NCBI GenBank assembly: GCA_037379345.1
Contig: CM074525.1
Location: 24,855,840-24,919,839 of the forward strand
From: Perna viridis
Taxonomy: Eukaryota
Length of the DNA: 64,000 nt
Direction of reading: 5' to 3'
Shown: positions 16,901 to 52,700 of the stretch, piece after piece
How the letters are laid out: each line of letters opens with the position of its first letter
How positions within the stretch are numbered: position 1 is the stretch's first letter
Translations under genes and position numbers: made by a program
Notes under the pieces: model-generated
What the model saw: only the letters and a program-made list of their open reading frames with translations
Database searches by the model: none
Told to the model about the DNA's origin: nothing

Positions 16901-19900
16901 TGTAACTTGTTCCGAGATTTAGCAAGTGTGTGTAACTTGTTCCGAGATTTAACAACTGTGTGTAACTTGTTCCGAGATTTAACAACTGTATGTAACTTGT
17001 TCCACCCATAAATTAAATCTTAATGATATCTTAGCACCAGTTGTTATATTGTGGTTATTCACTATAACCAATTAATTATCCTATTGATCATATAGACTTC
17101 CTCCATTATTTATTGCTATTTTCAGCATAAAATTCAAATTTTGTGGACCTTGGATTGATGTATAGGTTGTGATGTTTAGTTTTGGTGGGAGAAAGCCCAA
17201 GAGTAAAATTACTGAATTTATTGCACTGTGTGAATTATCAAAAATTTTTACACAGGGAACATTTGGTAAATCACTGTTATCTACATAGTAAAGCTATTTA
17301 ATCTTGTTCCTAAAACATTGAAATTTTATTAACATTTTATCCATTCTCAATATGTCTCTTGTTACTTAAGTAGTAATATATCCTGTTATATTGTCACACT
17401 CTCATCTACCCCCTTCTACTATATGGTGTTGACCAACTGTTGTCTAGAAACATGTGGTTAATCTGCATTGTATTGTGTATTGCTTGCATCTGTTCTGGAT
17501 GTGTACTGCATTGCATCTGTTTATGATGTGTATTGCCCCAGCAGCTGCTCACTGATGTAACCCAGTCTGTGAGATGATTGAGAACAGCTGTCCAATACAC
17601 CTGTAGCTTGGCTATTGGGATTTGTGGTCAAAGGGAGATAACTCTAACTCAATGTTAAATTGATAGCTGAAGAAAAAGTTGACCATTCTTGTGTTTATGG
17701 CAGGTATCCTTTTTTTTTTACTGTGAAAGGTCCATGCTGTTGGGGTCTTTCCAGATTTATTATACATGTGTTGACTGATAGGGGTTTTGCTTCTTGGGTT
17801 ATTATCGAAATATATTTCTGATGTAAATAATATGATGCTTTGGAAAATGTTCATGAACTTATTATAAAAACAATTTTGAAATGTAGTGTTGACGAGACTA
17901 AAGATTTGATTACAAAATAAAATCAGAAAAATCATCTGAGGATTAAATGTAGACCAAATATATACTGTTATACATTAGTACAAAAGTAAAATCTAACCAC
18001 AAGAAAAAAAAAACCTGATCTCCCTTTACAAAGGTTCTTGTCAAAGAATTAAGACTTCTATCCAATACATCTTATATTGTCATGGGGGATATAAAACCAA
18101 CCAAAACATTGATTTCACCTGGTTTTAACGAGTAATCACCTTGTCAACATTGTGTGAGGTTTGTAATTAGCACAGGTAGGTAATTAACCTGGTGACATTT
18201 TAATGCAGGTTGTTGTTCTTTGATGTAGTGTCGGGTCTCTGTATACAAGATTGTTAAAGTATCAAAATGATACATGATGGTTATACGACCACACATCACG
18301 AGGTTTTATGGGCTTTTATTTAAATACAGTGGAACAGGTCTAAATGCCTTTTGGTCTTACGAATTGGTTAAGACAGACATTTAACCTGATATACAGTGCT
18401 CGCCTTTAGCCACTAGCCCAAAGCCCAGGGCAAGTAAAAATTTATTCAGGCTAGTGGAATGATGTATACTTTTCTTGTTTTCGGTTAGTTGAATCCTATA
18501 CAGTCCTCTGCTGTTTGGGCTAGTTGAATCCTATACAGTCCTCTGCTGTTTGGGCTAGTTGAATCCTATACAGTCCTCTGCTGTTTGGGCTAGATCAATC
18601 CTATATAGTCCTCTACTATTCAGGTTAGTTGAATCCTACACAATCCTCTACTATTCAGGCTATTTGTTGAGAATTTTGTAGGACTAGATATATAGGGACT
18701 GTGTCTGGTTTAAACAGAGTTCAGAGTTCAGGTTCTAGTGTATGTTTTTGTCATATTATTTATATACCATCAAGACTTTGCCATTTTACACAAAAAATGT
18801 TACATAAATTTTGCAAAAAGGTCTGCCATACTATTAATGGTTAAAAGCTCTGCCATACTATTAATGGTTAAAACTATTATTGTTTATTCTAATATTGCTA
18901 CTGAAATCATGCTGTCTGTCCACAATTATAAAAACATCATGATAATCTAAGAATAACAGTACTCAGTCACATCATATAATTTATGTCTTCAGATGATACT
19001 ATATAAACTTCATCATTTCATCAATAAGTGAACTTAGTTATTCTTGTCCATATTATAGTAATGTGTTAATTTTCATTTTGGATGTTTTCTTCAGGTGTTA
19101 TTGTAATATTCCTCTCCTCCCTATCTTAGATCCCTCCCTTTTTTTAATTAAAGTCCTGGACCCAGCACCACAGAACTTGAGTAATTGAATCTGAGTTAAT
19201 TATTGACTCTCTGTGATATCATCTTTCCCTTCCTCAACTGAAAATGCATGCTATTTACACCTTCATGTAAGTCTATATATCCAAAGCCCCACCCTGAAAT
19301 TTATTTCAAGTCTCCTCCTTGCAATTTTAAAATGCCTGCCCTGGCCATTGCTGTCTATTTTAAGCCTCCCCAAATTAACAAAAATTTAAAATGTTTTACT
19401 TTGCCCATGAGGTTTTCTTAAACCCTCTGCTACCTGAAAATGTATGACCCCCTGCTGCAGTATTATTTAACCCCTCCACCGAGTTAAAAATGTCTGTCCT
19501 GGTCTCTGAAGTCTATTTAAAGCCCCCTCCCCATTTTTTCATAAACCCACCTTCTTATATGAAAAAAATCTGTCCCCACTAGGAGCAGCCAATTAAAAAT
19601 CCTTCTCAAATTAATTTTATCTGCTCCTGCCCCTAAAGTCTATTTAAGTTCCCTCCCAAATTAGATAATGTCTGTCCCTGCCATGAAGTTTAAAGACCCT
19701 GCTACTGCAGTCTATTTAAAGCCTTCCTGCAATTTCAAATATCTGCTTCACCTTTCAGTTTATTTAATACCCCTCCCTCATTTGAATATGTCTTCCCCCG
19801 CCCCTGCAGTCTATTCACACATTGTAATGGATGGCTCTAATTAAGTCTCTTAGGAAAACAGAAATGTTAAAATTCTTATCAATCTTACTGGCAATAAACC

Positions 19901-34900: not shown

Positions 34901-36302
34901 AACATTACATAACTTAGTAAGTAATCTGAGGAAATGAGGAAGAGTGAGCGTCAAGTGTCTGTGAATTTGAAATTTCAAACTTCTTTGTTTAAATATGAGA
35001 ATTTGGAGAACGGTTAATTTGCCAAATAAATGTAATCAAAGCAGTTAAATTCTTTAAAGTATTAAGAATATGGATTGTATCTGTGATATTGGGGCATATT
35101 GCCAATTTGTCTGTTTTCCCCAAGGACCTTTGACCTAAAATAATGCACTGAGCATGTTTGTAAAATGTGGATATTGTTTAACTGGTAAAAGTAGTTGTTC
35201 TTTCCCTGAGTAAGACAGATGTAAGTCTCATTATCTTTCAGATTAGGCCAAATAAAATTAATTAATAGGTTTTCATCTGCTTCGGCCCCTAAAAAATGAC
35301 AAAAATATTTTAAAGAATTGGGGCAGGAATTTCAAAATCTGGTCTTTTTGCATCAGTTTCAAGTATTGAGATACTATAATATACTTTATTTTCCATTTCT
35401 TGGTGACTAAAATAATGTATCTTCTCTGAAATGGATGTTGCTGTGGATTTAGAACATATATAAGTACTTCAAATAACTAAAATTAAGTTAGCAAATATGT
35501 CTATTACAGTAAGAAATGAAAAATAATCTGTTCCATATTTTCTGTGAAGGATGAAAATCTACCATTTAAGTTTACTTGACCTAAATGTAAAAGTTAAAAT
35601 GAACTTAAATGCCATCTTGATCACCATTTGGTTATTGGTTTGAAAGGTCAAAAGTTCGGCCAGAAAAACTTGTTAACAGATAACTTTTTTCAAAATAACT
35701 CGTAGTTGTTATATATTCATTAACTATAGCCTGTTAAAAGTTAGGAGCATCAGTCCCTTACTACATAGATGGTATCTTGATATTCCCTCTAAGCTTACAT
35801 AGAAATTTTGTTCAGAGAAAAAACAACTATTTTTGGTGCATGTGTACTAACACTTCTGTTGGTTTACCCAGCAGAGAGGAATGGAAGAGAGGCTGGATGA
35901 CGCGATTCACGTTCTCCGTGATCACGTAGAAATGGAGGTAAAAATTTCCCAGGGTTCCCTGGTTACAGCTTTATGTTAGCTTATTATTGCGAGGGAGGCG
36001 GTTATGTTGTTTTTGTTCTCAATATTATAGGTTTACTTTGAGAAGCTGTTGATGATCAATCACAAATCAGTCAAGCCTGAATTTCTTCTGCTTTGTAAAA
36101 TTTCATTCTTAAATTTTTTTATTTTATTTTTTTTTTTTATTTATACACTTTTGGTAATTGACCTCTGACCTCCATTACGGCTGTATAAGTGGTTATTTAT
36201 GCATTCATAAAATTTTGACCATATCTACAATAGACCTACAGATATAAAAGTAAAAACACTTCAATAATGCCCTCCCTTCAAATTAGGAGTTATTCCCCTT
36301 TA

Positions 36303-36342
<40 letters not shown>

Positions 36343-39300
36343 TTGATTCAGGTAATGTGAAAATGACATTACATCACATGAAATTAAAATAATACATTTT
36401 TACAATGAAAAACTTTAAATTTTCCAGCAGCCAATTAAAAAACCACTTACATGTTATAAATGTACCATAATCTGTCATATATTTTAGAACTTGAAACCTG
36501 TATTTGTTTTATTATTTGAGTGTATACCTAGAGAGGTGAAAATTTTTTCTGAAGAACTTTGTCATTATATTATTTCAATGAAAACAAAAAAAAAATTACT
36601 TGAAGAAAATTTCTACAAGATCTTGTTATCTTCATATGGTTCCAAATTTAATGTGTTTTTGACATGCATGAATCACCTCTTGTCTAATTTTTTTTCCCAG
36701 ATTGTTTCAAGAAAGTTTTTTGTCCTATCGTCATTTTTTTACCCTCCTCTGAATTTTTTTCTCCACTGAGGATAGTCTGAACTTTTTTCACAGTTGTAAT
36801 GTGTTACATTTTATGAGAGCATGTTGAAGTTTTGGGTTTTTAGATGTATCAATCTTGTTGCATGTTGTTCTATATTTATCATTATAGCTTTGCATGTGCT
36901 TATTATTGATATACTGACCAACACTGGAAATCATAAGACTAAGGACTGTAGACAATTTCTACTAGACATGGAAAGTATGCTATTTACATGTATACTGGGA
37001 TTGTAGGCCATTTCTATTTGACACTTTAGTTTCAACTTGTGGGCAGAATCTTGATCAGTAATTCCATATTGTAAATATAGCACTTTTCTGTAAAGATTGT
37101 ATCCACATTTTACAGAAAAATTGTCACATTTTCTTGTGGAAGTACCTACTTAAGCATGCTCAGAAATGACAATGCAAATGTTTCTTTAAAAAAAAAAGTG
37201 TTTTCTTTATAAATTATTGATAATTCATTTCTGTGCTATATGTTGACTTAGAATGTGTTGGTCAGTGTATCATGTTCATACACCTCTCAATAAGTACCAA
37301 GCAAAAGTCATCTCTTTATATACCTCTGAATAAAAACCTATTAAAAGTCATCAATGTCCTCTTTTTAAAACCTTTCAATAAGTACCAATCAGAAGTCATC
37401 TCTTTATATACCTCTCAATAAAATCCAAACAAAAGTCATCATTGTCCTCTTTATTTACCGCTCAATAAAAACCAATCAAAAGTCATCAGTGTCCTCTTTT
37501 TATACCTCTCAGTAAGTACCAATCAAAAATCATCTCTTTATATACCTCTCAATAAAATCCAATCAAAAGTCATCAGTGTCATCTATATACCTCTTAATAA
37601 ATACCAATCAAAAGTTATCAGTGTCCTCTTTATACCTTTCAGTATGTACCAATCAGAAGTCATCAATATCCTCTTTATATACCTCTTAATAAGTATGCAT
37701 TGAAAGTCATCAAACTTCCTCTTAATATACCTCTCAATAAGTACCAATCGAAAGTCCTCAATGTCCTCTTTATACCTCTCAATAAGTACCAATCAAAAGT
37801 CATCAATGTCCTCTTTATATACCTCTCAATAAAAACCAATCAAAAGTCATCAATGTCATCTTTTTATACCTCTCAGTAAGTACCAATCAAAAATCATCTC
37901 TTTATATATCTCTCAATAAAAACCAATCAAAAGTCATCTATGTACTCTTTATATACCTCTTAAAATGTACTAATCAGAAGTCGTCAATATCCTCTTTATA
38001 TACCTCTCAATAAGTACGCATTGAAAGTCATCAAATGTCCTCTTCATATACCTCTCAATAAGTACAAATTGAAAGTCATCAATGTCCTCTTTATACCTCT
38101 CAATAAAAACCAATCAAAAGTCATCAATATCCTCTTTATATACCTTTCAATAAGTACCAATCAGAAGTCATTAATGTCCTCTGTATTATTTCTCAACAGG
38201 TAACAATGAGTGTCATTTGTACGAATCAAAAGTCTTCAGTGTTCTGTTACATATAGTTATAAGGTGAATACTTCCATTTAGATATATTCCTTTTGGAAGG
38301 TATCATATCTAAAGACATCTGTGATAAAGAACCCACAGACTGTTATCACTTCGTCTATGCAATACATATATGTGTTATAAAGAACCCACAGACTGTTACC
38401 CCCTTGTCTATACAGTACATATATGTGCTTCATTTCACTGTCAATTTCTTAGTACACTGCGTCAACATCATAAAATATTAAAGGAATGATTTTATTTTTC
38501 AGAGTCGAATGGAAGAAAGACTTGACGATGCAATATACGTTCTACGTCATCACGCAGAACCCCAACAGATGGGTCCCGGAGGAATGATGCCACATTCCAA
38601 TGGAATCATGGGATACGGTGGTGGCATGTCTAACACCATAGAGGCCTTGGTAAGAATGATCTGTTGTCATGGACACCATATATATGCTTCACTATTGACA
38701 TGTAAAATGGCTTTGGTAAGAACAATCTGTTGTCATGATATGCTTCACTATTGACATGTAAAATGGCCTTGGTAAGAACGATCTACTGTCATGGACACTA
38801 TATATATGCTTCACTGTTGACATGTAAAATGGCCTTGGTGATAAGATCTGTTGTCATGGACACCATATATATATGCTTCACTATTGACATGTAAAATGGC
38901 CTTGGTAAGAACGATCTGTTGTCATGGACACCATATATATGCTTCACTATTGACATGTAAATTGGCCTTGGTAAGAACAATCTGTTGTCATGGACACCAT
39001 ATATATGCTTCACTATTGACATGTAAAATGGCCTTGGTAAGAACAATCTACTGTCATTGACACCATATATATGCTTCAGTGTTGACATGTAAAATGGCCT
39101 TGGTGATAACTATCTGTTGTCATGGACACCTTATATATGCTTCAGTATTGACATGTAAAATGGCCCTGGTTAGAACAACCTGTAGTCATGGAAACCATAT
39201 ATATGCTTCACTATTGACATGTAAAATGGCCTTTGTTAGAACAATCTGTTGTCATGGACACCTTATATGTGCTTCACTATTGACATGTAAAATGGCCTTG

Positions 39301-42300: not shown

Positions 42301-45300
42301 GTTATTTTTATACCCCCACAAACAAAGTTTTTGGAGTATATAGGTTTGACTTTGTCTGTCTGTCCACAGCAATTTTCTAATCAGCTTGATGCATTGTTAT
42401 TAAACTATGTTGGATGGAAAATAACCACATGGAGATGTGTATACTGTCATGAATATATAAGTTTTTGCAAAAATTGAAGAAATGACGACTCGTGGACATA
42501 GGCATTTATTTCAACAAACTTGGTCTCGTGTGTTGTAGGCAACTCCTCCTCATGGAATTGCGGGATTGTTATAAAACTTGATTGGAGTATTAAATTACCA
42601 TATTGACACATGCCTGTTGTCAAGAATTTATGTTTAGGCAAAAATTGTAGAAATGTTGGCTGATGGACTTAAGTGTTTTTCAGCAAATCTTGGTCTGATG
42701 TGTTGTCCACAGCTCCTCCTCAACGACTTGTAGGATTGTTATGAAACTCGACAAAGTTTTAGTTTACCATATTGTGGTGTACTTGTTGTCAGTGATATAT
42801 GTTTACAGTAAATTTGCAGTCATATTCTGTTGTGTTAAAAAAAAAGTACTAATTGCAGTTTGGAGTTGGGTGTTTTAGAATGGCATAAGTGTTAGAATGG
42901 CACCAATGTTGTGTGTCAGAAGTGCTTAGTCTATCTTTCATGAATATTAAATCCAATATGAATCATGTGTCCACATTGTTTCCAAATGTACAGGGTTCAA
43001 CAAGCTGCGGTGGTATTAGTGAGGTTAGGGGCAGTGTCTAGTTTTTTGGGAAATACTGTTTACCTTCTCCCATCACTTATGTTACAAATTATAAATAGAG
43101 TTTTAGCAGTTGTGATTATAACACTGATATGAGAAAGACACTATGTTTAATGCCAGCAAAAAATTTTTACACGTCTGTATGTCGGTGTTTGTTAAGAGCG
43201 TTTCCATTTTTGTTCTAGACATACATATAATATAATATTAAAGGTATTGTTAGAAAATGTAAAAGACAGGGAAAAAATTACGCTTTGACCTACCCACGAA
43301 AACCACGAAAATTGGTACCCCCATGAACAATAATACTTGCACAGTATTACTATAATTGTAATTGTAACAATATTTCAATCATTTTTATAATACATTCCGT
43401 TCTTGGTAATTTCAGTTCACACATTAGAACAAAGTCAGTCAACCCAACAGAAGAATTCAGACAAATCAGAGAAAAAAGACAGCAAAAAGGACTCAGAAAC
43501 TGCTTCAGTCAAACCCCCTCCTACTAAAAGATCTCGGTAAGTAGGACTCAGAAACTGTTTCAGTCTAACCCCTTCCTACTGAAAGGTCTCGGTAAGTAGG
43601 ACTTCAGAACAGCTTCAGTCCACCCCTCCTTCAAAAAGATCTTGGTAAGTAGGACTCAAACTGTTTCAGTCTAACCTCTTCCTCCTAAAAGATCTCAGTA
43701 AGTCGGACTTCGGAACAGCTTCAGTCTAACCCCCTCGTATAAAAAGAACTCGGTAAGTAGGACTCAGGAACAGGTTCAGTCCACCCCTCGTATTAAAAGA
43801 TCTCACTTGGTAGGACTCAGGAACAGCTTCAGTCCACCCCCTCCTACAAAAATGTCTTAGTAGGACTGATGAACAGCTTCAATCTAACCCCCTCCTGCAA
43901 ATAGATCTTGGTAAGTAGGACTCAGGAACAGCTTGTATGTGTCATTATGAGATATGTTTAACAATTACAATGTCAATCTGTTAAACAGTGATAGAAGTAA
44001 TTCTATCTGATGTAATGTAGAAATACGTGGAAGTGTTATAGTTCGTGGAGTATCAGTTTTCATGGTTTTTGGTTTACCATGAAATCTGGTTCAGAACAAA
44101 ATAGAACTTTCCCATTGAATCGTATGTTAGAAATGTCAAATCATCAAAATTAAATAATCTATGAACTTATGTTTTATTTCCTATACCACGAAAATAGGTA
44201 CTTACAATTAAAAGTACTTCTACGGTAGTCCTGACTGTCTAGTATGTTTGAATGTTAAGGAATCAATGAAGTTGTGTTCAATAAGTAATCAATGATACAT
44301 GTATGATATGCTGTATGATTTATAATTGACAGGTGGACGTCTAAAGAAAAACAGCAGCCAGGAACAGGACCTTCTTCACCCTCATCGTAAGTTTCTTCTA
44401 CAGGTCAAAGTTGGCTTCATGCATCAATTTAGTGAAAGTGTATTAAAATTTTAATTATCATCTCTGAAACACACTTATCAACAATTAAAAGAAAAACACA
44501 TTAAAATTGTATATGTGACTTTGCTGTTGATCTTAAATTATGATGTTAGACACCAATTTATAAAAGGTATATTGATATATTAGTTGGAAGCTTTAGATCT
44601 ACACAAAAACTCTTTGATAAGCAGTGGTATGTCCATGTGGAGATTAAGAGTTGTTCCCCTTTACTAGTTTCCATAGGGTAGAATCAATACACTGAAGCTA
44701 TCATTTGACTGTGAAAACAGTATCAAAATCCCACTTTTTATTTCTAAGGTCAAAGGTCATTTATTTGTCTTCTGTATATTTACTTCCTAATTGATCAAGT
44801 CGATTTTTGGTGGATATTTTTTGGTTCCTAGACTACCCATAGTCTCTCTTGTGGTTGCCTAATTACAAATTTTTATTTACATTAATTAAAAGGATCCAGT
44901 CTGCCATAATTTTATAAGCAGTTCTCTCATCACCTTCTGAGGGGTGTGAAAGAATAGCTCACCAACTTACAAGTGTTTCATGAAAAGTTGGCATGAGAAT
45001 TAAATAGTTACCTTTGATTGTTCTTACATTACTATTGATTATTTGATTGAGTTAATGAATCTTTGTTTTTTTTTATTGTCAGTCTCTGTAAGGATCAGGC
45101 AGTGGGTTCAAACGGAAAAAATACCACTATTTTGCAAGTTTAATTCAGCTATTTGGACCATCAAAATCAAGAGAGAAAAAAACGAGATTTTTCCATTAAA
45201 GTTGTAATTTATCGGAATGCACTGAAAATTAACATTTCAAGGACAGATAAATCTGTCTAAACATCATTTTTCTAACATTCTATCGACATTCTATTTAAAA

Positions 45301-46133
45301 AATTTTGAGCCAACCCAGTAATGCAGAGATCAAAGAATGGTCTGGTATCATTGAAATTTTTGGTCGGTTTTTGACACGTTCCCATTTTGCCTGATCTTTA
45401 CCTGCCGTCTCTGCCAAAAACTTAACCTGATCTCTCTCTCTCTCTCTCTCAAAAACTTAACCTGATCTCTCTGTCAGAAAATTCACCTGCTCTCTCTCAA
45501 AAACTTAACCTGATCTCTCTGTCAGAAAATTTACCTGCTCTCTCTCTCTCTTTCTCAAAAACTTAACCTGATCTCTCTGTCAGAAAATTCACCTGCTCTC
45601 TCTCTCTCTCTTTCTCAAAAACTTAACCTGATCTCTCTGTCAGAAAATTCACCTGCTCTCTCTCGCTCAAAAACTTAACCTGATCTCTGTCAGAAAATTC
45701 ACCTGCTCTCTCTCTCTCAAAAACTTAACCTGATCTCTGTCAGAAAATTCACCTGCTCTCTCTCTCAAAAACTTAACCTGATCTCTGTCAGAAAATTCAC
45801 CTGCTCTCTCTCTCTCTCTCTCTCAAAAACTTAACCTGATCTCTCTGTCAGAAAATTCACCTGCTCTCTCTCTCTCTCAAAAACTTAACCTGATCTCTCT
45901 GTCAGAAAATTCACCCGCTCTCTCTCTCTCTCTCAAAAACTTAATCTGATCTCTGTCAAAAAATTCACCTGCTCTCTCTCTCAAAAACTTAACCTGATCT
46001 CTCTGTCAGAAAATTCACCTGCTCTCTCTCTCTCTCTCTCAAAAACTTAATCTGATCTCTCTGTCAAAAAGTTCACCTGCTCTCTCTCTCAAAAACTTAA
46101 CCTGATCTCATCTCTCTGTCAGAAAATTCACCT

Positions 46134-46168
<35 letters not shown>

Positions 46169-46407
46169 AACTTGACCAGATCTCTCTGTCAGAAAATTCA
46201 CCTGCTCTCTCTCTCAAAAACTTAACCTGATCTCTGTCAGAAAATTCACCTGCTCTCTCTCTCAAAAACTTAACCTGATCTCTCTGTCAGAAAATTCACC
46301 TGCTCTCTCTCTCTCTCAAAAACTTAACCTGATCTCTCTGTCAAAAAGTTAACCTGCTCTCTCTCTCACAAAAACTTAACCTGATCTCTCTGTCAGAAAA
46401 TTCACCT

Positions 46408-46450
<43 letters not shown>

Positions 46451-46689
46451 AACTTGACCAGATCTCTCTGTCAGAAAATTCACCTGCTCTCTCTCTCAAA
46501 AACTTAACCTGATCTCTGTCAGAAAATTCACCTGCTCTCTCTCTCAAAAACTTAACCTGATCTCTCTGTCAGAAAATTCACCTGCTCTCTCTCTCTCTCA
46601 AAAACTTAACCTGATCTCTCTGTCAAAAAGTTAACCTGCTCTCTCTCTCACAAAAACTTAACCTGATCTCTCTGTCAGAAAATTCACCT

Positions 46690-46758
<69 letters not shown>

Positions 46759-49700
46759 AACTTAACCTGATCTCTCTGTCAAAAAGTTCACCTGCTCTCT
46801 CTCTCTCTCTCTTTCTCAAAAACTTAACCTGATATCTCTGTCAGAAAATTCACCTGCTCTCTCTGTCAGAAACTTAACCTGATCTCTCTCTCTCGAAAAC
46901 TTAACCTGATCTCTCTCTCTCAAAAACTTAACCTGCTCTTTCTCTCTCAAAAACTTAACCTGCTCTCTCTCTCTCTCTCAAAAACTTAACCTGCTCTCTC
47001 TGTCAGAAACAAGTGCATGCCCTTTGATTTAAGAACCATAAAGAAAATATTTGAATTACATGTAACAAAGCTTATTAATTAGGTAAACACATGAAATCTA
47101 AAATATTATGAAAGCTTTGTGAGGGATGGTTTTCATTCTGTACCCTAGGATTATAATCAATTAAAAAAAACCAGCTATTTAGACATCTCCTTCTTTGAAT
47201 AAATCCATGTTTTGACTTCAACATATTATATCACATTGTTTTATAAAGCCCTTGTTTATTTGTCTGCACAATTAGTCCATTGTTATTTGGTTCGTGTACA
47301 TTTTATATGAGGCTATTGTTAATTGATCATACTTGTAATAATGCAAAACTTTCATGATGCGAAATGAGATGTCAAAATGTTTTAAAAATCAAAAGTTTGG
47401 AATAAGACCAAGGCTTGTGACACATGGTCGTTGTATTTTATTTCAACAGTCAGATTGACGACCCTGATGAGTCTCCGGAAACTAAGTTAGAGAGAGAACG
47501 CGTTAGGCGACAAGCCAACAATACACGAGAAAGGTTTGTCTATATTTCCCTTGGATTTTGTGCCCATCTATGTAGATTTAATCTGAAAGTCAGCCAGGTA
47601 TCAGTTTCTCCCAAGGTATGGATGTTAGTAAATCACCATCATCATTTCTTGTCTTTAAAAGGTATAAAGAAGCCTTACCATCAACAAGCAAGGTTAATTT
47701 TATTTGTTTGTGAAAATCAGAATTTTCAATATTTTTCACATGAAATTAACGATTTTCATGTGAAATTCACTAAACATTAATTTCATGTGAACATTTCGTG
47801 TGAATTTCACATGAACTCTATCACTTAGTTTACTTGCTCAATTTAGGTGAAAATCATGTGAAATTCATGTGAAAATCATTTCAAATAATTCTGCCAGTGT
47901 ATAAAGTTATTGTTTTGATGATTATCTTTTGTTGTTTATACTAAAATCAGTTTCACTAAAACACAAAGAAGACTTGGAATAATATCAGATTTAACAGTAC
48001 ATTGACTATTCTACAGATCAGAATTCTGTGCATGAAGACAAGGTATTTGGCCTACATTCAGATTAGAACTACATTCTGTGTTATGAAACCTATCCACTCC
48101 CATTCAATGATTATTACCAATTATCTAGAGTTTTGGCTATTGAATACCACACTTAATATGTTTTAGACAGTTTTAAATTGATTAATAAAATTGTTACTTT
48201 TAAAGGGCAACATATTTTTCTTCAATTCAAATCTAGTTCAGCCCTTACCAACACCATTGTCTTCTTTAAATAAACTTGTGCAGCCATTGTGGTAGTGAAG
48301 ATAACTGGTTTATTTTTGGAGTAATCTGAATGAGAGTGATCAGGTGTATAGTTTTGTTGGTTTTGGGATATTCATGTTGTCAGCACTCAGTTCTGGTCTG
48401 TCTGTTTCATTGGCAGTAATGACCTCGCCGATGAAGACGAGTCTCCGGAGACCAAGCTGGAACGTGAGAGATTACGGCGACAAGCTAATAATGCTCGGGA
48501 AAGGTTTGTCTTGATTCTCTGGGTGACGTATTGCAGGGTTATTGCACAAATATTTGGAAACACTGTGCCAAGTAGGGTGTATTATTGCACAACCTTTAAG
48601 AAGCATTATACATCTTACAAGGCATAATATTCCTAAATATTTATGCAATAAGCCTTTTATTGTATAGCAATCAATCATTGTTTGATTCATTATTTCCTTA
48701 TGATTACATTTTTGCAAGTTATATTTGCATTTGTGTAATTAATTCATTTATAACACTTTTGTAAAAGATAACTATCTGTGAGAAATGATATATTGCTATT
48801 CAATAAACCAGTATATTCAAGCTGTCTTCCTCTGGTCACTGTAGTATATAATTATCTATATTAATTCAGGAAGTAATGCCACAGTTTTATTGTTGCATGA
48901 ACTTGAACATATTATTTGCAATAAACCATTTTTGGAAGTTTTGTTATAAATTTCTCAGTGCCTCATCTAACAACGACAAATGAAATGGTCCTGTTTCAAA
49001 AAAATGCAGTAATAATTGTGTGCAATATTTTCTGAATTTACAGTTTACAAGTATTTGAATTATAATGCCCTGCCAACAATATTCAGGTATATATATATAT
49101 ATCAATGTGTCTGTCTATCTGTGCATCAGTTCCAATAGTAATGTTAGTACATGTGTTTTAGCTTAGTTTAACTGGCAATCTTTACTAGCTCAAAACATAG
49201 AATTTTTATTCATAAAAATAGGATGAGTTGGTTAAAAAAAACGCCACACTTTTTCTGGCTGTGAAATGATGTGCAGGGCATTAGAACTGTATCATATTGA
49301 TTTGTTTGATAACGTGTCATCATAATACAGTAATTACATTGTCAAGTGTTATACTTTAAAAATGAATGTTTTCAGGGAGTATGTAAACCATCAAGTATCT
49401 AAGTCCTACAGTCCCTGGAACTATCCATGCGACTTTTACAGTCCCTGAAACTATCCATGCAACTTTTACTGCCCCTGAAACTATCCACACATTATTACAG
49501 TCCCTGAAACTATCCATGCAATTTTTACAGTCCCTGAAATTATCCATGCAACTTTCTGATGCATTGATGATCCATGATTGAATGATTGCTGACAGTTGTC
49601 CAGTGACCAATCTGATCACAGTTTTGTTGAGTAAAATGACAGATGATCAGTTCATGTAAATCTAAGAATTTTCATTGTAAAAATCTAAATTATTAAATCT

Positions 49701-52700
49701 AAAATGCAAGATAAAAATAATTCAATTGATGTCTAATTGTATATCACTTAGAAAATATACGTAAAAATGGAAAACCAAAAAACAATCCTTAAATTGTATT
49801 TACCGATCAGCAGTATCGTGATGGAACAAAGAAGTGATCACTGATGAAATGAATTGATGACTGATCAGAAACTGATTGATAATCGATGACGAATTACAAT
49901 TATAGTTGTATGGATCGGTTCAGATACTGTATATGTTTGTATGGACTAAACAAACAAAAATGTTATGAAGAAAAATTTACATTGAAATAAGATAGTTATA
50001 ACAAGATACATGTGTGTAAATATGGGTACAGTATCAATTGATCTTGTGAAATAAAATTTTACATACATTTGATTGTTTCTACAATTTAGTCAAGTATGTT
50101 TTAATTAAGAAATTTTCCTTTCATTCTGTTATACCAAATATTTGATAGATCTATTAAATTGATGACTTAAAAATAAATAGATGTGACAATTTCATTAGGT
50201 CTATTGTTTCTAATAAAAAAACAGAAGGCATATCAATTTGACATTTTTTTGTGAAAATAGAAAAGTTAAATCACTTGTCAAAATAAGCTACTTTGCAGTT
50301 TCTGGTTCTATCTTTTTTTTTTTATATTTGATACTGAGAAGTATTCTATTGATGATAGAAATTATGAAATAGTTATTTATTTACAGAATAAGAGTTAGAG
50401 ATATCAATGAAGCCTTTAAAGAATTAGGGAGTATGGTCTCATTACACTCAGGAAACAGTCAGCCACTGACAAAACTAATGGTCTTACAGCAGGCTGTAAA
50501 TGTGATAACATCACTAGAACAACAAGTCAGGGGTTAGTAACTTTTTAAAATAATGTTTTTACAGCAGGGGTAAAATGTGATTATATCACTAGAACATCAG
50601 GTCAGGGGTTAGTAACTTACTAAAATGATGGTTTAACAACAGGGGTAAAATGTGATTATATCACTAGAATAACAGGTCAGTGGTTAGTAACTTACTAAAA
50701 TGATGGTTTAACAACAGGGGTAAAATGTGATTATATCACTAGAACATCAGGTCAGTGGTTAGTAACTTACTAAAATGATGGTTTAACAACAGGGTGTAAA
50801 ATGTGATTATATCACTAGAACATCAGGTCAGGGGTTAGTAACTTACTAAAATGATGGTTTTACAGCAGGGGTAAAATGTGATTATATCACTAGAACATCA
50901 GGTCAGGGGTTAGTAACTTACTAAAATGATGGTTTTACAGCAGAGTGTAAAATGTGATTATATCACTAGAACATCATGTCAGGGGTTAGTAACTTACTAA
51001 AATGATGGTTTTACAGCAGGGGTAAAATGTGATTATATCACTAGAATAACAGGTCAGGGGTTAGTAACTTACTAAAATGATGGTTTTACAGCAGGGGTAA
51101 AATGTGATTATATCACTAGAATAACAGGTCAGGGGTTAGTAACTTACTAAAATGATGGTTTTACAGCAGGGTGTAAAATGTGATTATATCACTAGAACAT
51201 CAGGTCAGTGGTTAGTAACTTACTAAAATAATGGTTTTACAGCAGGGTGTAAAATGTGATTATATCACTAGAACATCAGGTCAGTGGTTAGTAACTTACT
51301 AAAATGATGGTTTTACAGCAGGGTGTAAAATGTGATTATATCACTAGAACATCAGGTCAGGGGTTAGTAACTTACTAAAATGATGGTTTTACAGCAGGGG
51401 TAAAATGTGATTATATCACTAGAACAACAGGTCAGGGGTTAGTAACTTACTAAAATGATGGTTTTACAGCAGGGTGTAAAATGTGATTATATCACTAGAA
51501 CATCAGGTCAGTGGTTAGTAACTTTTTAAAATGATGGTTTTACAGCAGGGGTAAAATGTGATTATATCACTAGAACATCAGGTCATTGGTTAGTAACTTA
51601 CTAAAATGATGGTTTTACAGCAGGGGTAAAATGTGATTATATCACTAGAACATCAGGTCAGTGGTTAGTAACTTACTAAAATGATGGTTTTACAGCAGGG
51701 GTAAAATGTGATTATATCACTAGAACATCAGGTCAGTGGTTAGTAACTTACTAAAATAATGGTTTTACAGCAGGGGTAAAATGTGATTATATCACTAGAA
51801 TAACAGGTCAGGGGTTAGTAACTTACTAAAATGATGGTTTTACAGCAGGGTGTAAAATGTGATTATATCACTAGAACATCAGGTCAGTGGTTAGTAACTT
51901 ACTAAAATGATGGTTTTACAGCAGGGTGTAAAATGTGATTATATCACTAGAACATCAGGTCAGTGGTTAGTAACTTACTAAAATGATGGTTTAACAACAG
52001 GGGTAAAATGTGATTATATCACTAGAACAAGTTAGGGGTTAGTAACTTACTAAAATGATGATGTTACAGGAGGTAAAATGTGATTATATCACTAGAACAT
52101 CAGGTCAGTGGTTAGTAACTTACTAAAATGATGGTTTAACAACAGGGGTAAAATGTGATAATATCACTAGAATAACAGGTCAGGGGTTAGTAACTTACTA
52201 AAATAATGGTTTTACAGCAGGGTGTAAAATGTGATTATATCACTAGAACAAGTTAGGGGTTAGTAACTTACTAAAATGATGATGTTACAGGAGGTAAAAT
52301 GTGATTATATCACTAGAACAAGTTTGGGGTTGAGAATATCCAGTTACCATGGTTTGAATTTACCGGTCGGCAGAATAGGGTTCAATAAAGATCCAACCAT
52401 ATCAACTAATGTTACTAAAAGGACGACATACTAAGAACACATTATACAAGAACCATAACTCTTGTCTTTCTCATCAATTTCTACAAAAATTGCCTACCAT
52501 TTCTTTTTCTCATGCATTTCCTAAAGGCCGTTTTCGAAACAACCTCATATGAAGGCTTTTTTTAAAAATATAAGTAGGATATTCCATTTTACTGCATTTT
52601 CTTGTTACTGATGTTTGAGAAGGGAGATAACTGCTAGAAACATAGGACATGCAGTGTATAACACAGAGACTGACTTGAAAGTTTTAAAAAATTATTGGTC

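What the first reader, a model, noticed from the sequence alone, without database searches (positions are those of the whole stretch)
47450..48503. Duplicated, probably mutually exclusive basic-region exons: an invertebrate E12/E47-like switch that swaps only the DNA-binding segment
Seen: two intact phase 2-2 exons (84 and 87 nt), 883 nt apart, encode [28 protein letters not shown] and [29 protein letters not shown]. They have identical GAAAG|gtttgtct donors and differ at many synonymous positions, so both look constrained. Both can feed the single HLH exon at 50387. Known: vertebrate TCF3 makes E12/E47 by mutually exclusive splicing of the whole bHLH exon, and the acidic stretch before the E12 basic region dampens homodimer binding. 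Inference: this is an independent duplication that changes the acidic pre-basic region and the basic helix (non-canonical ANNTRER vs ANNARER) while leaving the dimerisation surface constant. Both exons are multiples of 3, so dual inclusion or dual skipping (a basic-less, Id-like dominant negative) would also stay in frame. I cannot check whether this has been described.
Basis: partly seen in the sequence, partly recalled or inferred. Interest (0 to 1): 0.88.

Follow-up and report, generated by a model that had tools for sequence, protein, structure and literature searches.

The report
Duplicated DNA-binding exon in mussel E-protein
A mussel's single E-protein (TCF3/4/12, daughterless) gene has two old, conserved copies of the short exon for its DNA-contacting helix; only the first, non-canonical copy was seen in RNA, so the proposed switch is plausible but unproven.

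Summary
Exons P1 (47450-47533) and P2 (48417-48503) have the stated lengths, phases, peptides and identical AAAG|GTTTGTCT donors, and lie upstream of a single HLH exon (50387-50532) in a single-copy E-protein gene.

The duplication is old and both copies are constrained. Between P1 and P2, synonymous sites are saturated (pS 0.93) while pN is 0.13. P2 orthologues with intact frame and splice sites exist in Mytilus edulis and in a third mytilid. Against that third species, P2 gives pN 0.06 and pS 0.75.

Use of P2 was not seen. Transcript contigs from four studies all join exon O to P1 to the HLH exon, and none covers P2. All 15 transcript-derived proteins from mytilid relatives that reach this region use the P1 type. 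So the non-canonical exon (ANNTRER) is the default. The canonical P2 is at most a minor or restricted form.

The event is not unique to this species. RefSeq isoforms of the snails Physella and Biomphalaria swap two full-length basic-region exons (ANNNRER or ANNARER). Scallops, clams, abalone and a chiton instead add a short second basic exon after a constitutive one.

I found no paper describing this. Verdict: a real, conserved alternative-exon pair and a new variant of the E12/E47 theme; mutual exclusivity is inferred.

The parts
43416..43536 (+). Exon N of the E-protein gene (...KPPPTKRS-R); its donor is CG|GTAAGT.
   Evidence: tblastn with Mytilus P0157 and the close relative P0216; sequence read.
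44333..44386 (+). Exon O, 54 nt, coding (R)[17 protein letters not shown](S). It is the exon spliced to P1 in transcripts.
   Evidence: The loose end before 47450 in three of the four runs laid matches 44357-44386 exactly; boundaries and phase.
47450..47533 (+). Exon P1, 84 nt: acidic pre-basic and basic region, [27 protein letters not shown](R). This is the default exon in mRNA and has the non-canonical Thr at basic-helix position 7.
   Evidence: Joint 47533->50387 (listed as 47531->50385, cut +2, GT..AG) in one contig from each of four runs from four studies. Orthologues carry ANNCRER in Mytilus edulis (L001, exon ending 70353) and in a third mytilid (L007, about 16949-17031), and ANNTRER in the close relative P0216.
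48417..48503 (+). Exon P2, 87 nt: a paralogous basic-region exon coding [28 protein letters not shown](R), the canonical E-protein basic helix. It is conserved but was not seen in RNA.
   Evidence: No contig covers 48318-48789 in any of the four runs. Orthologues: L007 17405-17491 [28 protein letters not shown] (pN 0.06, pS 0.75) and L001 70820-70909 (T)NDVGEEDETTETKLQRKLIRRQANNATE (pN 0.18, pS 0.94). Single copy in the genome.
48396..48416 (+). Pyrimidine/G-rich element GGTCTGTCTGTTTCATTGGCAG that includes the P2 acceptor. It is the only intron stretch shared by the three mytilids I compared.
   Evidence: Alignment (Mytilus TTGTCTGTCTTTTTTCTTAG; third mytilid GGTCTGTTGTCTGTTTTCTTAGCAG). Flank identity is 0.48 upstream and 0.39 downstream, against 0.67 in the exon.
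50387..50532 (+). The single HLH exon, coding (R)[48 protein letters not shown]. It is common to all possible isoforms.
   Evidence: Pfam PF00010, E 1.1e-9; the only HLH match of this kind in the genome; joined to P1 and to the next exon at 52893 in RNA contigs.

Best explanation
The window holds most of the single E-protein gene (class I bHLH; TCF3/4/12, daughterless) of a mytilid mussel. The exon that encodes the acidic pre-basic stretch and the DNA-contacting basic helix was duplicated in tandem before the mytilid lineages sampled here separated. Both copies have since been kept as coding exons.

P1 carries Thr at position 7 of the basic helix (ANN-T-RER; Cys in three other mytilids). It is the default exon and is spliced O-P1-HLH in ordinary tissues. 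P2 keeps the pan-metazoan ANN-A-RER helix. I infer that it is a regulated alternative exon used in restricted cells or stages, and that it replaces P1 (O-P2-HLH), as the two full-length basic exons of heterobranch snails do in RefSeq isoforms.

The result would be two E proteins with the same activation domains and the same dimerisation surface, but different basic helices and slightly different acidic lead-ins. That would retune DNA affinity or E-box and partner preference for every class II partner at once.

Shown: the exon anatomy, the age of the duplication, purifying selection on both copies, conservation of P2 and its splice sites in three mytilids, use of P1 in RNA, and the parallel isoforms in snails.

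Inferred: that P2 is spliced at all in this species, that its use excludes P1, and any effect on DNA binding. Because the intron between the exons is 883 nt, the AG-free zone before P2 is only about 28 nt, and both exons are multiples of three, neither steric hindrance nor nonsense-mediated decay can enforce exclusivity. It would have to come from trans-acting factors acting on two equally weak GTTTGT donors and the conserved element before P2.
For: Gene identity: Pfam HLH, and exon-by-exon matches to Mytilus TCF4/12 proteins from 2975 to 55326. The gene is single-copy.

Constraint between paralogues: P1 against P2 gives pS 0.93 and pN 0.13, Fisher p 4e-9. The differences fall 7/1/14 by codon position.

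Conservation of P2: it is present, open and flanked by AG and GT in Mytilus edulis (L001 70820-70909) and in a third mytilid in three independent contigs (L007-L009). P2 against the third-species copy gives pN 0.06 and pS 0.75, which is tighter than P1 against its orthologue (pN 0.14). Identity between the window and Mytilus is 0.67 in the exon and 0.39-0.48 in its flanks. The donor AAAG|GTTTGT is kept in P1, P2 and both copies of the third mytilid, and in the first Mytilus copy.

P1 as the default: one GT..AG joint, P1 to HLH, in contigs of four runs from four studies, with upstream loose ends equal to exon O. All 15 transcript-derived proteins of mytilid relatives that reach this region carry the P1 type: P0216, seven in the P0191 cluster, five in the P0189 cluster and the two Mytilus edulis RefSeq isoforms.

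Precedent for exclusive use: Physella acuta isoforms X3 and X5 carry [27 protein letters not shown], while X1, X2, X4, X6 and X7 carry ...[24 protein letters not shown]. Biomphalaria glabrata X3 differs from X1 and X2 in the same way. No isoform has both, and the HLH is the same in all. The Elysia genome has the same order as the window, with the non-canonical exon first, then the canonical one, then the HLH exon.
Against: No RNA evidence for P2. Depth is zero over 48318-48789 in all four transcript assemblies, although some other intron pieces appear at depth 2-3 and the P1-HLH contigs sit at depth 22-34. Contigs drop minor variants, so this limits P2 to a minor share in those samples but does not exclude it.

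No P2-type transcript protein was found in any mytilid cluster.

In Mytilus edulis the P2 orthologue has changed conserved residues (ERER to QRKL, RER to TER), which may mean relaxed constraint there.

In pectinids, venerids, Mya, Haliotis and a chiton, RefSeq isoforms carry a second basic exon together with the first, so exclusivity is not the only mollusc pattern.

I found no structural mechanism that would enforce exclusivity.
Confidence: 0.55

Rival explanations
1. P2 is a cassette exon that is added after P1 (O-P1-P2-HLH) rather than replacing it. The P1-P2 junction codon becomes AGT, so the protein reads ...[15 protein letters not shown]...[14 protein letters not shown]. The canonical helix then abuts the HLH and the P1 helix is pushed 29 residues upstream.
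For: Both exons are multiples of three and the junction stays in frame. RefSeq isoforms of Mizuhopecten, Pecten, Ylistrum, Argopecten, Mercenaria, Ruditapes, Mya, Haliotis and the chiton Liolophura have this layout (...ANNARE-S/R/Y... second basic segment ...RERVRVRDIN) beside isoforms with the first exon alone. The 883-nt intron between P1 and P2 is perfectly spliceable.
Against: In those species the added exon is a short, truncated copy (13-21 residues, lacking ESPETKxERER). Here both exons are full length, as in the snails where use is exclusive. No P1-P2 joint appears in any of the four runs.
Confidence: 0.2
2. P2 is a retired exon. It was once functional, which explains the coding-like divergence, but it is no longer spliced in living mussels and survives by chance or through slow decay.
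For: There is no RNA coverage of P2 and no P2-type transcript protein in any mytilid cluster. The Mytilus edulis copy has lost conserved residues and is not annotated in RefSeq.
Against: The introns around it are unalignable between genera, with only a short acceptor-proximal element shared. P2 nevertheless keeps its frame, AG acceptor with pyrimidine tract and GT donor in three lineages. Window against the third mytilid gives 24 of 28 identical residues at pS 0.75 and pN 0.06. That requires selection along most of the path joining two living species, so any retirement would have to be very recent and parallel.
Confidence: 0.15
3. The pair exists to make a basic-less, Id-like dominant negative by skipping both exons (O-HLH), or an isoform with two basic regions, as the main regulated product.
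For: Skipping both keeps the frame (O-HLH junction TCA, Ser).
Against: No O-HLH joint appears in the four runs. Skipping does not explain why the amino-acid sequence of P2 is conserved. No such isoform appears among about 150 mollusc isoforms examined.
Confidence: 0.05

Closest known systems
Vertebrate TCF3 (E2A) E12/E47 mutually exclusive exons
   Same: The gene family is the same (E protein). In both cases tandem-duplicated exons in the DNA-binding region give isoforms with different DNA-binding behaviour (E12 weak, E47 strong; PMC6317319, PMC6795145). Some teleost tcf3 models even carry ANNTRER in one copy (P0188, P0217, P0228).
   Different: In TCF3 the duplicated exon encodes the whole bHLH, so the dimer interface changes too. 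Here an intron splits the domain after RER and only the 28-29-residue acidic and basic segment is duplicated; the HLH is constant. The two duplications are independent events. TCF3 exclusivity is documented and depends on hnRNPH1 and PTBP1 (PMC6795145); here exclusivity is not shown.
RefSeq isoforms of heterobranch snail E-protein genes (Physella acuta XP_059159596-603, Biomphalaria glabrata XP_013067996 / XP_055872533-4)
   Same: Two full-length basic-region exons (ANNNRER and ANNARER) are used one at a time with one HLH exon. In the Elysia genome the order is non-canonical, canonical, HLH, as in the window. The variable residue is the same position 7 of the basic helix.
   Different: The residue is Asn rather than Thr or Cys. 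Both forms are annotated in the snails, whereas P2 has no transcript support in mussels. Whether the snail and mussel pairs are orthologous could not be resolved from about 26 residues. These are automatic annotations, and I found no publication on them.
Second basic-region cassette exons of scallops, venerid and myid clams, abalone and chiton
   Same: They occupy the same intron position and phase, are derived from the same exon, and again vary at position 7 (ANNDRER, ANNNRER).
   Different: They are short (13-21 residues), lack the ESPETKxERER lead-in, lie after a constitutive canonical exon, and are added to it rather than swapped.
Duplicated HLH exons in other invertebrate E-protein genes (oysters, Pinctada, Gigantopelta, Mercenaria, arthropods, tapeworms, siboglinid worms)
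   Same: These are also tandem exon duplications inside the bHLH of the sole E-protein gene, and RefSeq isoforms differ in that exon.
   Different: The neighbouring exon (HLH) is the one duplicated there. In the window the HLH exon is single.

Membership tests
E protein (class I bHLH: TCF3/TCF4/TCF12, daughterless, HLH-2) | bHLH domain with the E-protein signature ([20 protein letters not shown] ... [24 protein letters not shown]) | tested here: met
   Pfam HLH, E 1.1e-9. The HLH exon is 92% identical to Mytilus TCF4/12 and 60-85% identical to E proteins across animals. The next exon encodes [18 protein letters not shown]. The closest solved structures are TCF4 and E2A.
E protein (class I bHLH: TCF3/TCF4/TCF12, daughterless, HLH-2) | Activation domains AD1 (LDFS-type motif) and AD2 ([15 protein letters not shown]) upstream in the same gene | tested here: met
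   AD2 is at 38503-38652, with a second copy at 35872-35946. Other N-terminal exons match Mytilus and P0216. The AD1 exon itself was not located in the window.
Tandem-duplicated, mutually exclusive exons | Adjacent homologous exons of similar length and the same phase, each with its own splice sites | tested here: met
   84 and 87 nt, same phase, AG acceptors, identical GTTTGTCT donors.
Tandem-duplicated, mutually exclusive exons | Both copies conserved as coding sequence across species | tested here: met
   Three mytilid genomes were compared; pN/pS is 0.08-0.22 for both exons.
Tandem-duplicated, mutually exclusive exons | Mature transcripts contain one copy or the other, never both or neither | tested here: inconclusive
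   Only P1-containing contigs were seen in four runs, and no contig contains P2.
Tandem-duplicated, mutually exclusive exons | A mechanism enforcing exclusivity (steric hindrance, U2/U12 incompatibility, decay of frame-shifted double inclusion, or competing RNA pairings) | tested here: not met
   The intron is 883 nt and the AG-free zone before P2 is 28 nt. The donors are U2-type. Both exons are multiples of three. The only strong hairpin nearby is a dispersed repeat.
E12/E47-type switch in the strict sense | The alternative exons encode the entire bHLH, so DNA-binding and dimerisation surfaces change together | tested here: not met
   Only the pre-basic and basic segment is duplicated; the HLH exon is single.

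The most novel reading that the evidence does not exclude
Molluscs, and perhaps Lophotrochozoa more widely, run a splicing-controlled toggle on one residue of the E-protein basic helix. Position 7 is Ala in nearly all animals, but is Thr, Cys, Asn, Asp, Val or Gln in alternative or default exons here. In mussels the polarity is inverted: the default E protein is the non-canonical one, and the ancestral ANNARER helix is held in reserve as a tightly conserved exon for a rare cell type or stage. Together with the duplicated HLH exons found in oysters, arthropods, flatworms and annelids, this would mean that E12/E47-like isoform pairs arose repeatedly across Bilateria. That would point to a general need for two DNA-binding grades of the universal bHLH partner.
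Probability: 0.35. Interest if true: 0.8.

Novelty: new variant of a known kind. Interest (0 to 1): 0.6.

Why it matters
E proteins are the obligate partners of the tissue-specific bHLH factors, such as MyoD, the proneural proteins, Twist and Hand. A change in the E-protein basic helix therefore changes one half-site reader in every such dimer.

Vertebrate E12/E47 has long been the only textbook case of splicing that alters E-protein DNA binding, and it confounds DNA contact with dimerisation. A natural system that swaps only the basic helix would separate the two effects. Here the helices differ in essence at one residue (Ala against Thr, Cys or Asn).

Such a system gives direct material for binding-site assays. 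It would also show that this kind of regulation evolved more than once. For genome annotation, it flags a conserved coding exon that is missing from current mussel gene models.

Tried and rejected
1. Assembly artefact or recent duplicate. Rejected: the copies are only 68-69% identical in nucleotides, P2 is single-copy in the genome, and the pair is present in three genera.

2. Steric hindrance as the exclusivity mechanism. Rejected here: the intron is 883 nt and the AG-free zone is short. It may apply in Solemya, where the two exons are 32 nt apart.

3. A hairpin 3' of P2 (48535-48655, z -4.35) as a splice regulator. Rejected: it is a dispersed MITE-like repeat with at least 28 copies. The equivalent region after P1 is unstructured (z 0.29).

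4. Exon-exon pairing through the palindrome GTCTCCGGAGAC in P2 (pair I6). This follows from the ESPET codons and is not conserved in the other mytilids, so I dropped it.

5. P2 as an alternative first coding exon. Rejected: there is no in-frame ATG in its open frame.

6. Look-ups of P0152, P0016 and P0057 by exact protein found nothing, because only the longest isoform is on record. The chiton locus was too long to fetch.

7. Six literature searches and four papers opened yielded no description of an invertebrate E-protein exon switch. The library is only the open-access subset, so this is not proof of novelty.

8. I made no tree of the exon copies across Mollusca, because about 26 residues cannot resolve orthology.

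All searches used single exons by reference or database proteins.
Full report
**What is there.**
- P1 is 47450-47533 (84 nt) and P2 is 48417-48503 (87 nt).
- Each follows an AG acceptor and each ends AAAG|GTTTGTCT.
- In each, only one of the three forward frames is open.
- The peptides are [27 protein letters not shown](R) and [28 protein letters not shown](R).
- The next coding exon, 50387-50532, encodes (R)[48 protein letters not shown] and matches Pfam HLH (E 1.1e-9).

A tblastn of Mytilus E-protein isoforms against the window maps the rest of the gene from 2975 to 55326. The exons just upstream are N (43416-43536) and a 54-nt exon O (44333-44386). All junction codons work:
- O-P1 and O-P2 both give Ser.
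- P1-HLH and P2-HLH both give Arg.
- P1-P2 would give Ser.
- O-HLH would give Ser.

P2 and the HLH exon each occur once in the 723-Mb assembly.

**Which gene and which animal.** A whole-library HMMER search with the HLH exon returned E proteins only. The closest full-length hits are 'transcription factor 4/12' of Mytilus galloprovincialis and M. edulis, at 92% identity over the HLH exon. A Logan transcript protein, P0216, is 93-100% identical exon by exon, so it comes from a close relative. The window therefore comes from a mytilid mussel other than Mytilus. The run tool keeps the organism name coded.

**Age and constraint.** Over the 23-codon core, P1 and P2 differ at 22 nucleotides, split 7/1/14 by codon position. 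Nei-Gojobori counting gives Sd 15.0 of 16.2 synonymous sites and Nd 7.0 of 52.8 non-synonymous sites. That is pS 0.93 against pN 0.13, with Fisher p 4e-9. The duplication is therefore old, and both copies have been read as protein in this frame for most of the time since.

**P2 in other mussels.** The Mytilus edulis locus (L001) has only one annotated basic exon, coding [27 protein letters not shown] and ending at 70353.
- A sensitive tblastn found a second, unannotated copy at 70820-70909.
- It follows a long pyrimidine tract and an AG, is followed by GT, has the same phase, and codes (T)NDVGEEDETTETKLQRKLIRRQANNATE.

A third mytilid is represented by ENA assemblies ERZ21930238 and ERZ26273167 (three contigs, L007-L009).
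- Its first exon is ...[25 protein letters not shown].
- About 375 nt downstream lies [28 protein letters not shown], with donor AAAG|GTTTGT.

Pairwise values:

| Comparison | pS | pN |
|---|---|---|
| P2, window vs third species | 0.75 | 0.06 |
| P2, window vs Mytilus | 0.94 | 0.18 |
| P1, window vs third species | 0.83 | 0.14 |
| P1, window vs Mytilus | 0.78 | 0.17 |

P2 is thus at least as constrained as the expressed P1 in two of the three lineages. It is looser in Mytilus, where ERER and the first Arg of RER have changed.

Around P2 the introns do not align apart from a GGTCTGT(C/T)..TCTGTTT element at the acceptor. Identity between the window and Mytilus is 0.67 in the exon, against 0.48 and 0.39 in the flanks. 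The weak donor GTTTGT is shared by five of the six exon copies.

**What RNA shows.** The run search found 14 small assemblies that hold about 60% of the words of a 5.1-kb stretch covering the gene's last exons and downstream sequence. They behave as transcriptomes. I laid four of them, from four studies, on 47020-50545.
- Each gave one long contig (2-6 kb, depth 22-34) with a single GT..AG joint from the end of P1 to the start of the HLH exon.
- In three of the four, the listed upstream loose end equals the 3' end of exon O; in two of the four, the listed downstream loose end equals the start of the exon at 52893 (25 further loose ends were not shown).
- No contig touches 48318-48789, although scattered intron pieces at depth 2-3 occur elsewhere.

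So O-P1-HLH is the main mRNA, and P2 is at best a minor component in these samples.

Protein databases agree. All 15 transcript-derived proteins of mytilid relatives that reach this region carry the P1-type exon and none carries P2: P0216, the P0189 and P0191 clusters, and the two Mytilus edulis RefSeq isoforms.

**The wider picture.** The same exon has been duplicated in many molluscs, and RefSeq isoforms show how the copies are used.
- *Exclusive swap.* In the heterobranch snails Physella acuta and Biomphalaria glabrata, two full-length exons are used one at a time. Physella X3 and X5 and Biomphalaria X3 carry ...[24 protein letters not shown]. The other isoforms carry ...[22 protein letters not shown], and the HLH is the same in all. 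In the Elysia genome the Asn-type exon comes first, the Ala-type second and the HLH exon third. This is the layout of the window.
- *Add-on cassette.* In scallops, Mercenaria, Ruditapes, Mya, Haliotis and the chiton Liolophura, a constitutive canonical exon is optionally followed by a short second basic exon. Examples are STDEDSVSKAKRRQANNDRE, and in the chiton either [21 protein letters not shown] or RPEKDEVSAAMRRQANNNRE. This gives ...ANNARE-S...RRQANNDRER-VRVRDIN.
- *Very close pair.* In Solemya two full-length copies (ANNARER, ANNVRER) lie 32 nt apart, with GC donors.

The residue that varies is nearly always position 7 of the basic helix: Ala in canonical E proteins, but Thr, Cys, Asn, Asp, Val or Gln in these exons. 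Some teleost tcf3 models also show ANNTRER in one copy. Other invertebrates duplicated the neighbouring HLH exon instead.

**How it most likely works.** I favour a regulated alternative exon pair in which P1 is the default and P2, the ancestral-type helix, replaces it in a restricted context. The reasons are the strong constraint on P2 and the snail precedent for two full-length exons.

The step from 'conserved exon' to 'spliced exclusively' is inference. Nothing in the sequence enforces exclusivity:
- The intron is long enough to splice, and the branch point must lie close to P2.
- The donors are U2-type.
- Double inclusion or double skipping stays in frame.
- The one strong hairpin next to P2 is a dispersed repeat.

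Control would have to come from splicing factors acting on the two matched weak donors and the conserved element before P2.

From general knowledge of bHLH-DNA structures, not tested here, the base-contacting residues are the Glu and Arg of RER-xR and the Asn residues. Position 7 lies two residues before the Glu, off the base-contacting face. A Thr, Cys or Asn there would more plausibly tune backbone contacts, helix propensity or flanking-base preference than abolish binding. Solved TCF4 and E47 structures that could serve for modelling are listed.

**Rivals.** These are the cassette reading (P1 plus P2), a recently retired exon, and a basic-less product from skipping both. They are scored above.

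**Novelty.** Six full-text searches and four papers opened yielded no description of an invertebrate E-protein exon switch. The papers opened included the Murre 30-year review, the lophotrochozoan bHLH survey and the survey of tandem duplicated exons. The phenomenon is visible only in automatic RefSeq isoforms. It is a new variant of the E12/E47 kind: same family and same logic, but a different exon, with only the DNA-reading helix exchanged.

**Limits.** Exons were searched singly by reference, and full-length comparisons used database proteins.

Noticed in passing
window 50478-52320; also L007 19903-20175, L008 18637-19281, L009 11498-12685: A 75-nt minisatellite (24.6 copies, 93% matches) begins inside the HLH exon and repeats its last 55 nt together with the 5' splice site. 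The third mytilid has the same kind of array at the same exon, but with units of about 111 nt. The phenomenon therefore recurs or persists across genera while the unit differs.
   Followed up: partly
L007 about 17672-18256 (also L008 17051-17173): In the third mytilid, the 3' end of the P2 orthologue and its donor (...NNARERF...) are themselves amplified into a tandem array just downstream of the exon. This is another exon-end-seeded minisatellite, and it gives P2 many decoy donors.
   Followed up: no
L001 70820-70909 (Mytilus edulis, GCA_963676685.2): An unannotated 90-nt exon-like copy of the basic-region exon with intact AG and GT. It codes (T)NDVGEEDETTETKLQRKLIRRQANNATE, in which the first Arg of RER is replaced by Thr.
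   Followed up: partly
L003 94372-94577 and 95326-95660 (Solemya velum): Two full-length basic exons are separated by only 32 nt, both with GC donors. Two HLH exons lie about 45 nt apart. Introns this short could enforce mutual exclusion sterically, or the arrangement could be an assembly or model artefact.
   Followed up: no
proteins P0225/P0360, P0318/P0323, P0239/P0258, P0233/P0248, P0184-P0186, P0185, P0187, P0214, P0224, P0232, P0020, P0221: Many invertebrate E-protein genes have duplicated HLH exons. RefSeq isoforms of Gigantopelta, Mercenaria, Ostrea and Saccostrea differ in that exon. Gene models of Magallana (P0184, P0186), Pinctada, a siboglinid, a beetle, a lobster, a barnacle, an ostracod and tapeworms read through two or more copies. 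These look like independent E12/E47-like events.
   Followed up: partly
window 48535-48655: A 51-nt-arm hairpin lies 32 nt after the P2 donor (z -4.35 for the 201-nt stretch 48470-48670 that contains it). It belongs to a dispersed MITE-like repeat with at least 28 copies in the genome.
   Followed up: yes
window 47728-47963: Short RNA contigs at depth 150-570 map to a repeat rich in CATGTGAAATTCA inverted repeats in the P1-P2 intron. They most likely come from copies expressed elsewhere rather than from this intron.
   Followed up: no
window 45440-47010: A 1.5-kb CT-rich minisatellite (25/50-nt units, TCTCTCTCTCAAAAAATTAACCTGA) lies in the intron between exon O and P1.
   Followed up: no
window 43537-43800: The 3' end of exon N and its donor (AAAAGATCTCGGTAAGTAGGACT...) are repeated several times into the intron. 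This is another exon-end-seeded array.
   Followed up: no
window 35872-35946 and 38503-38652: There are two copies of the AD2 helix exon ([15 protein letters not shown]). Mytilus edulis isoform X1 (P0157) contains both in tandem, while X2 has one.
   Followed up: no
proteins P0188, P0217, P0228, P0095, P0131, P0150: Teleost E2A/tcf3-like proteins carry RR[ML]ANNTRER, the same Ala-to-Thr change at basic position 7 as mussel P1.
   Followed up: no
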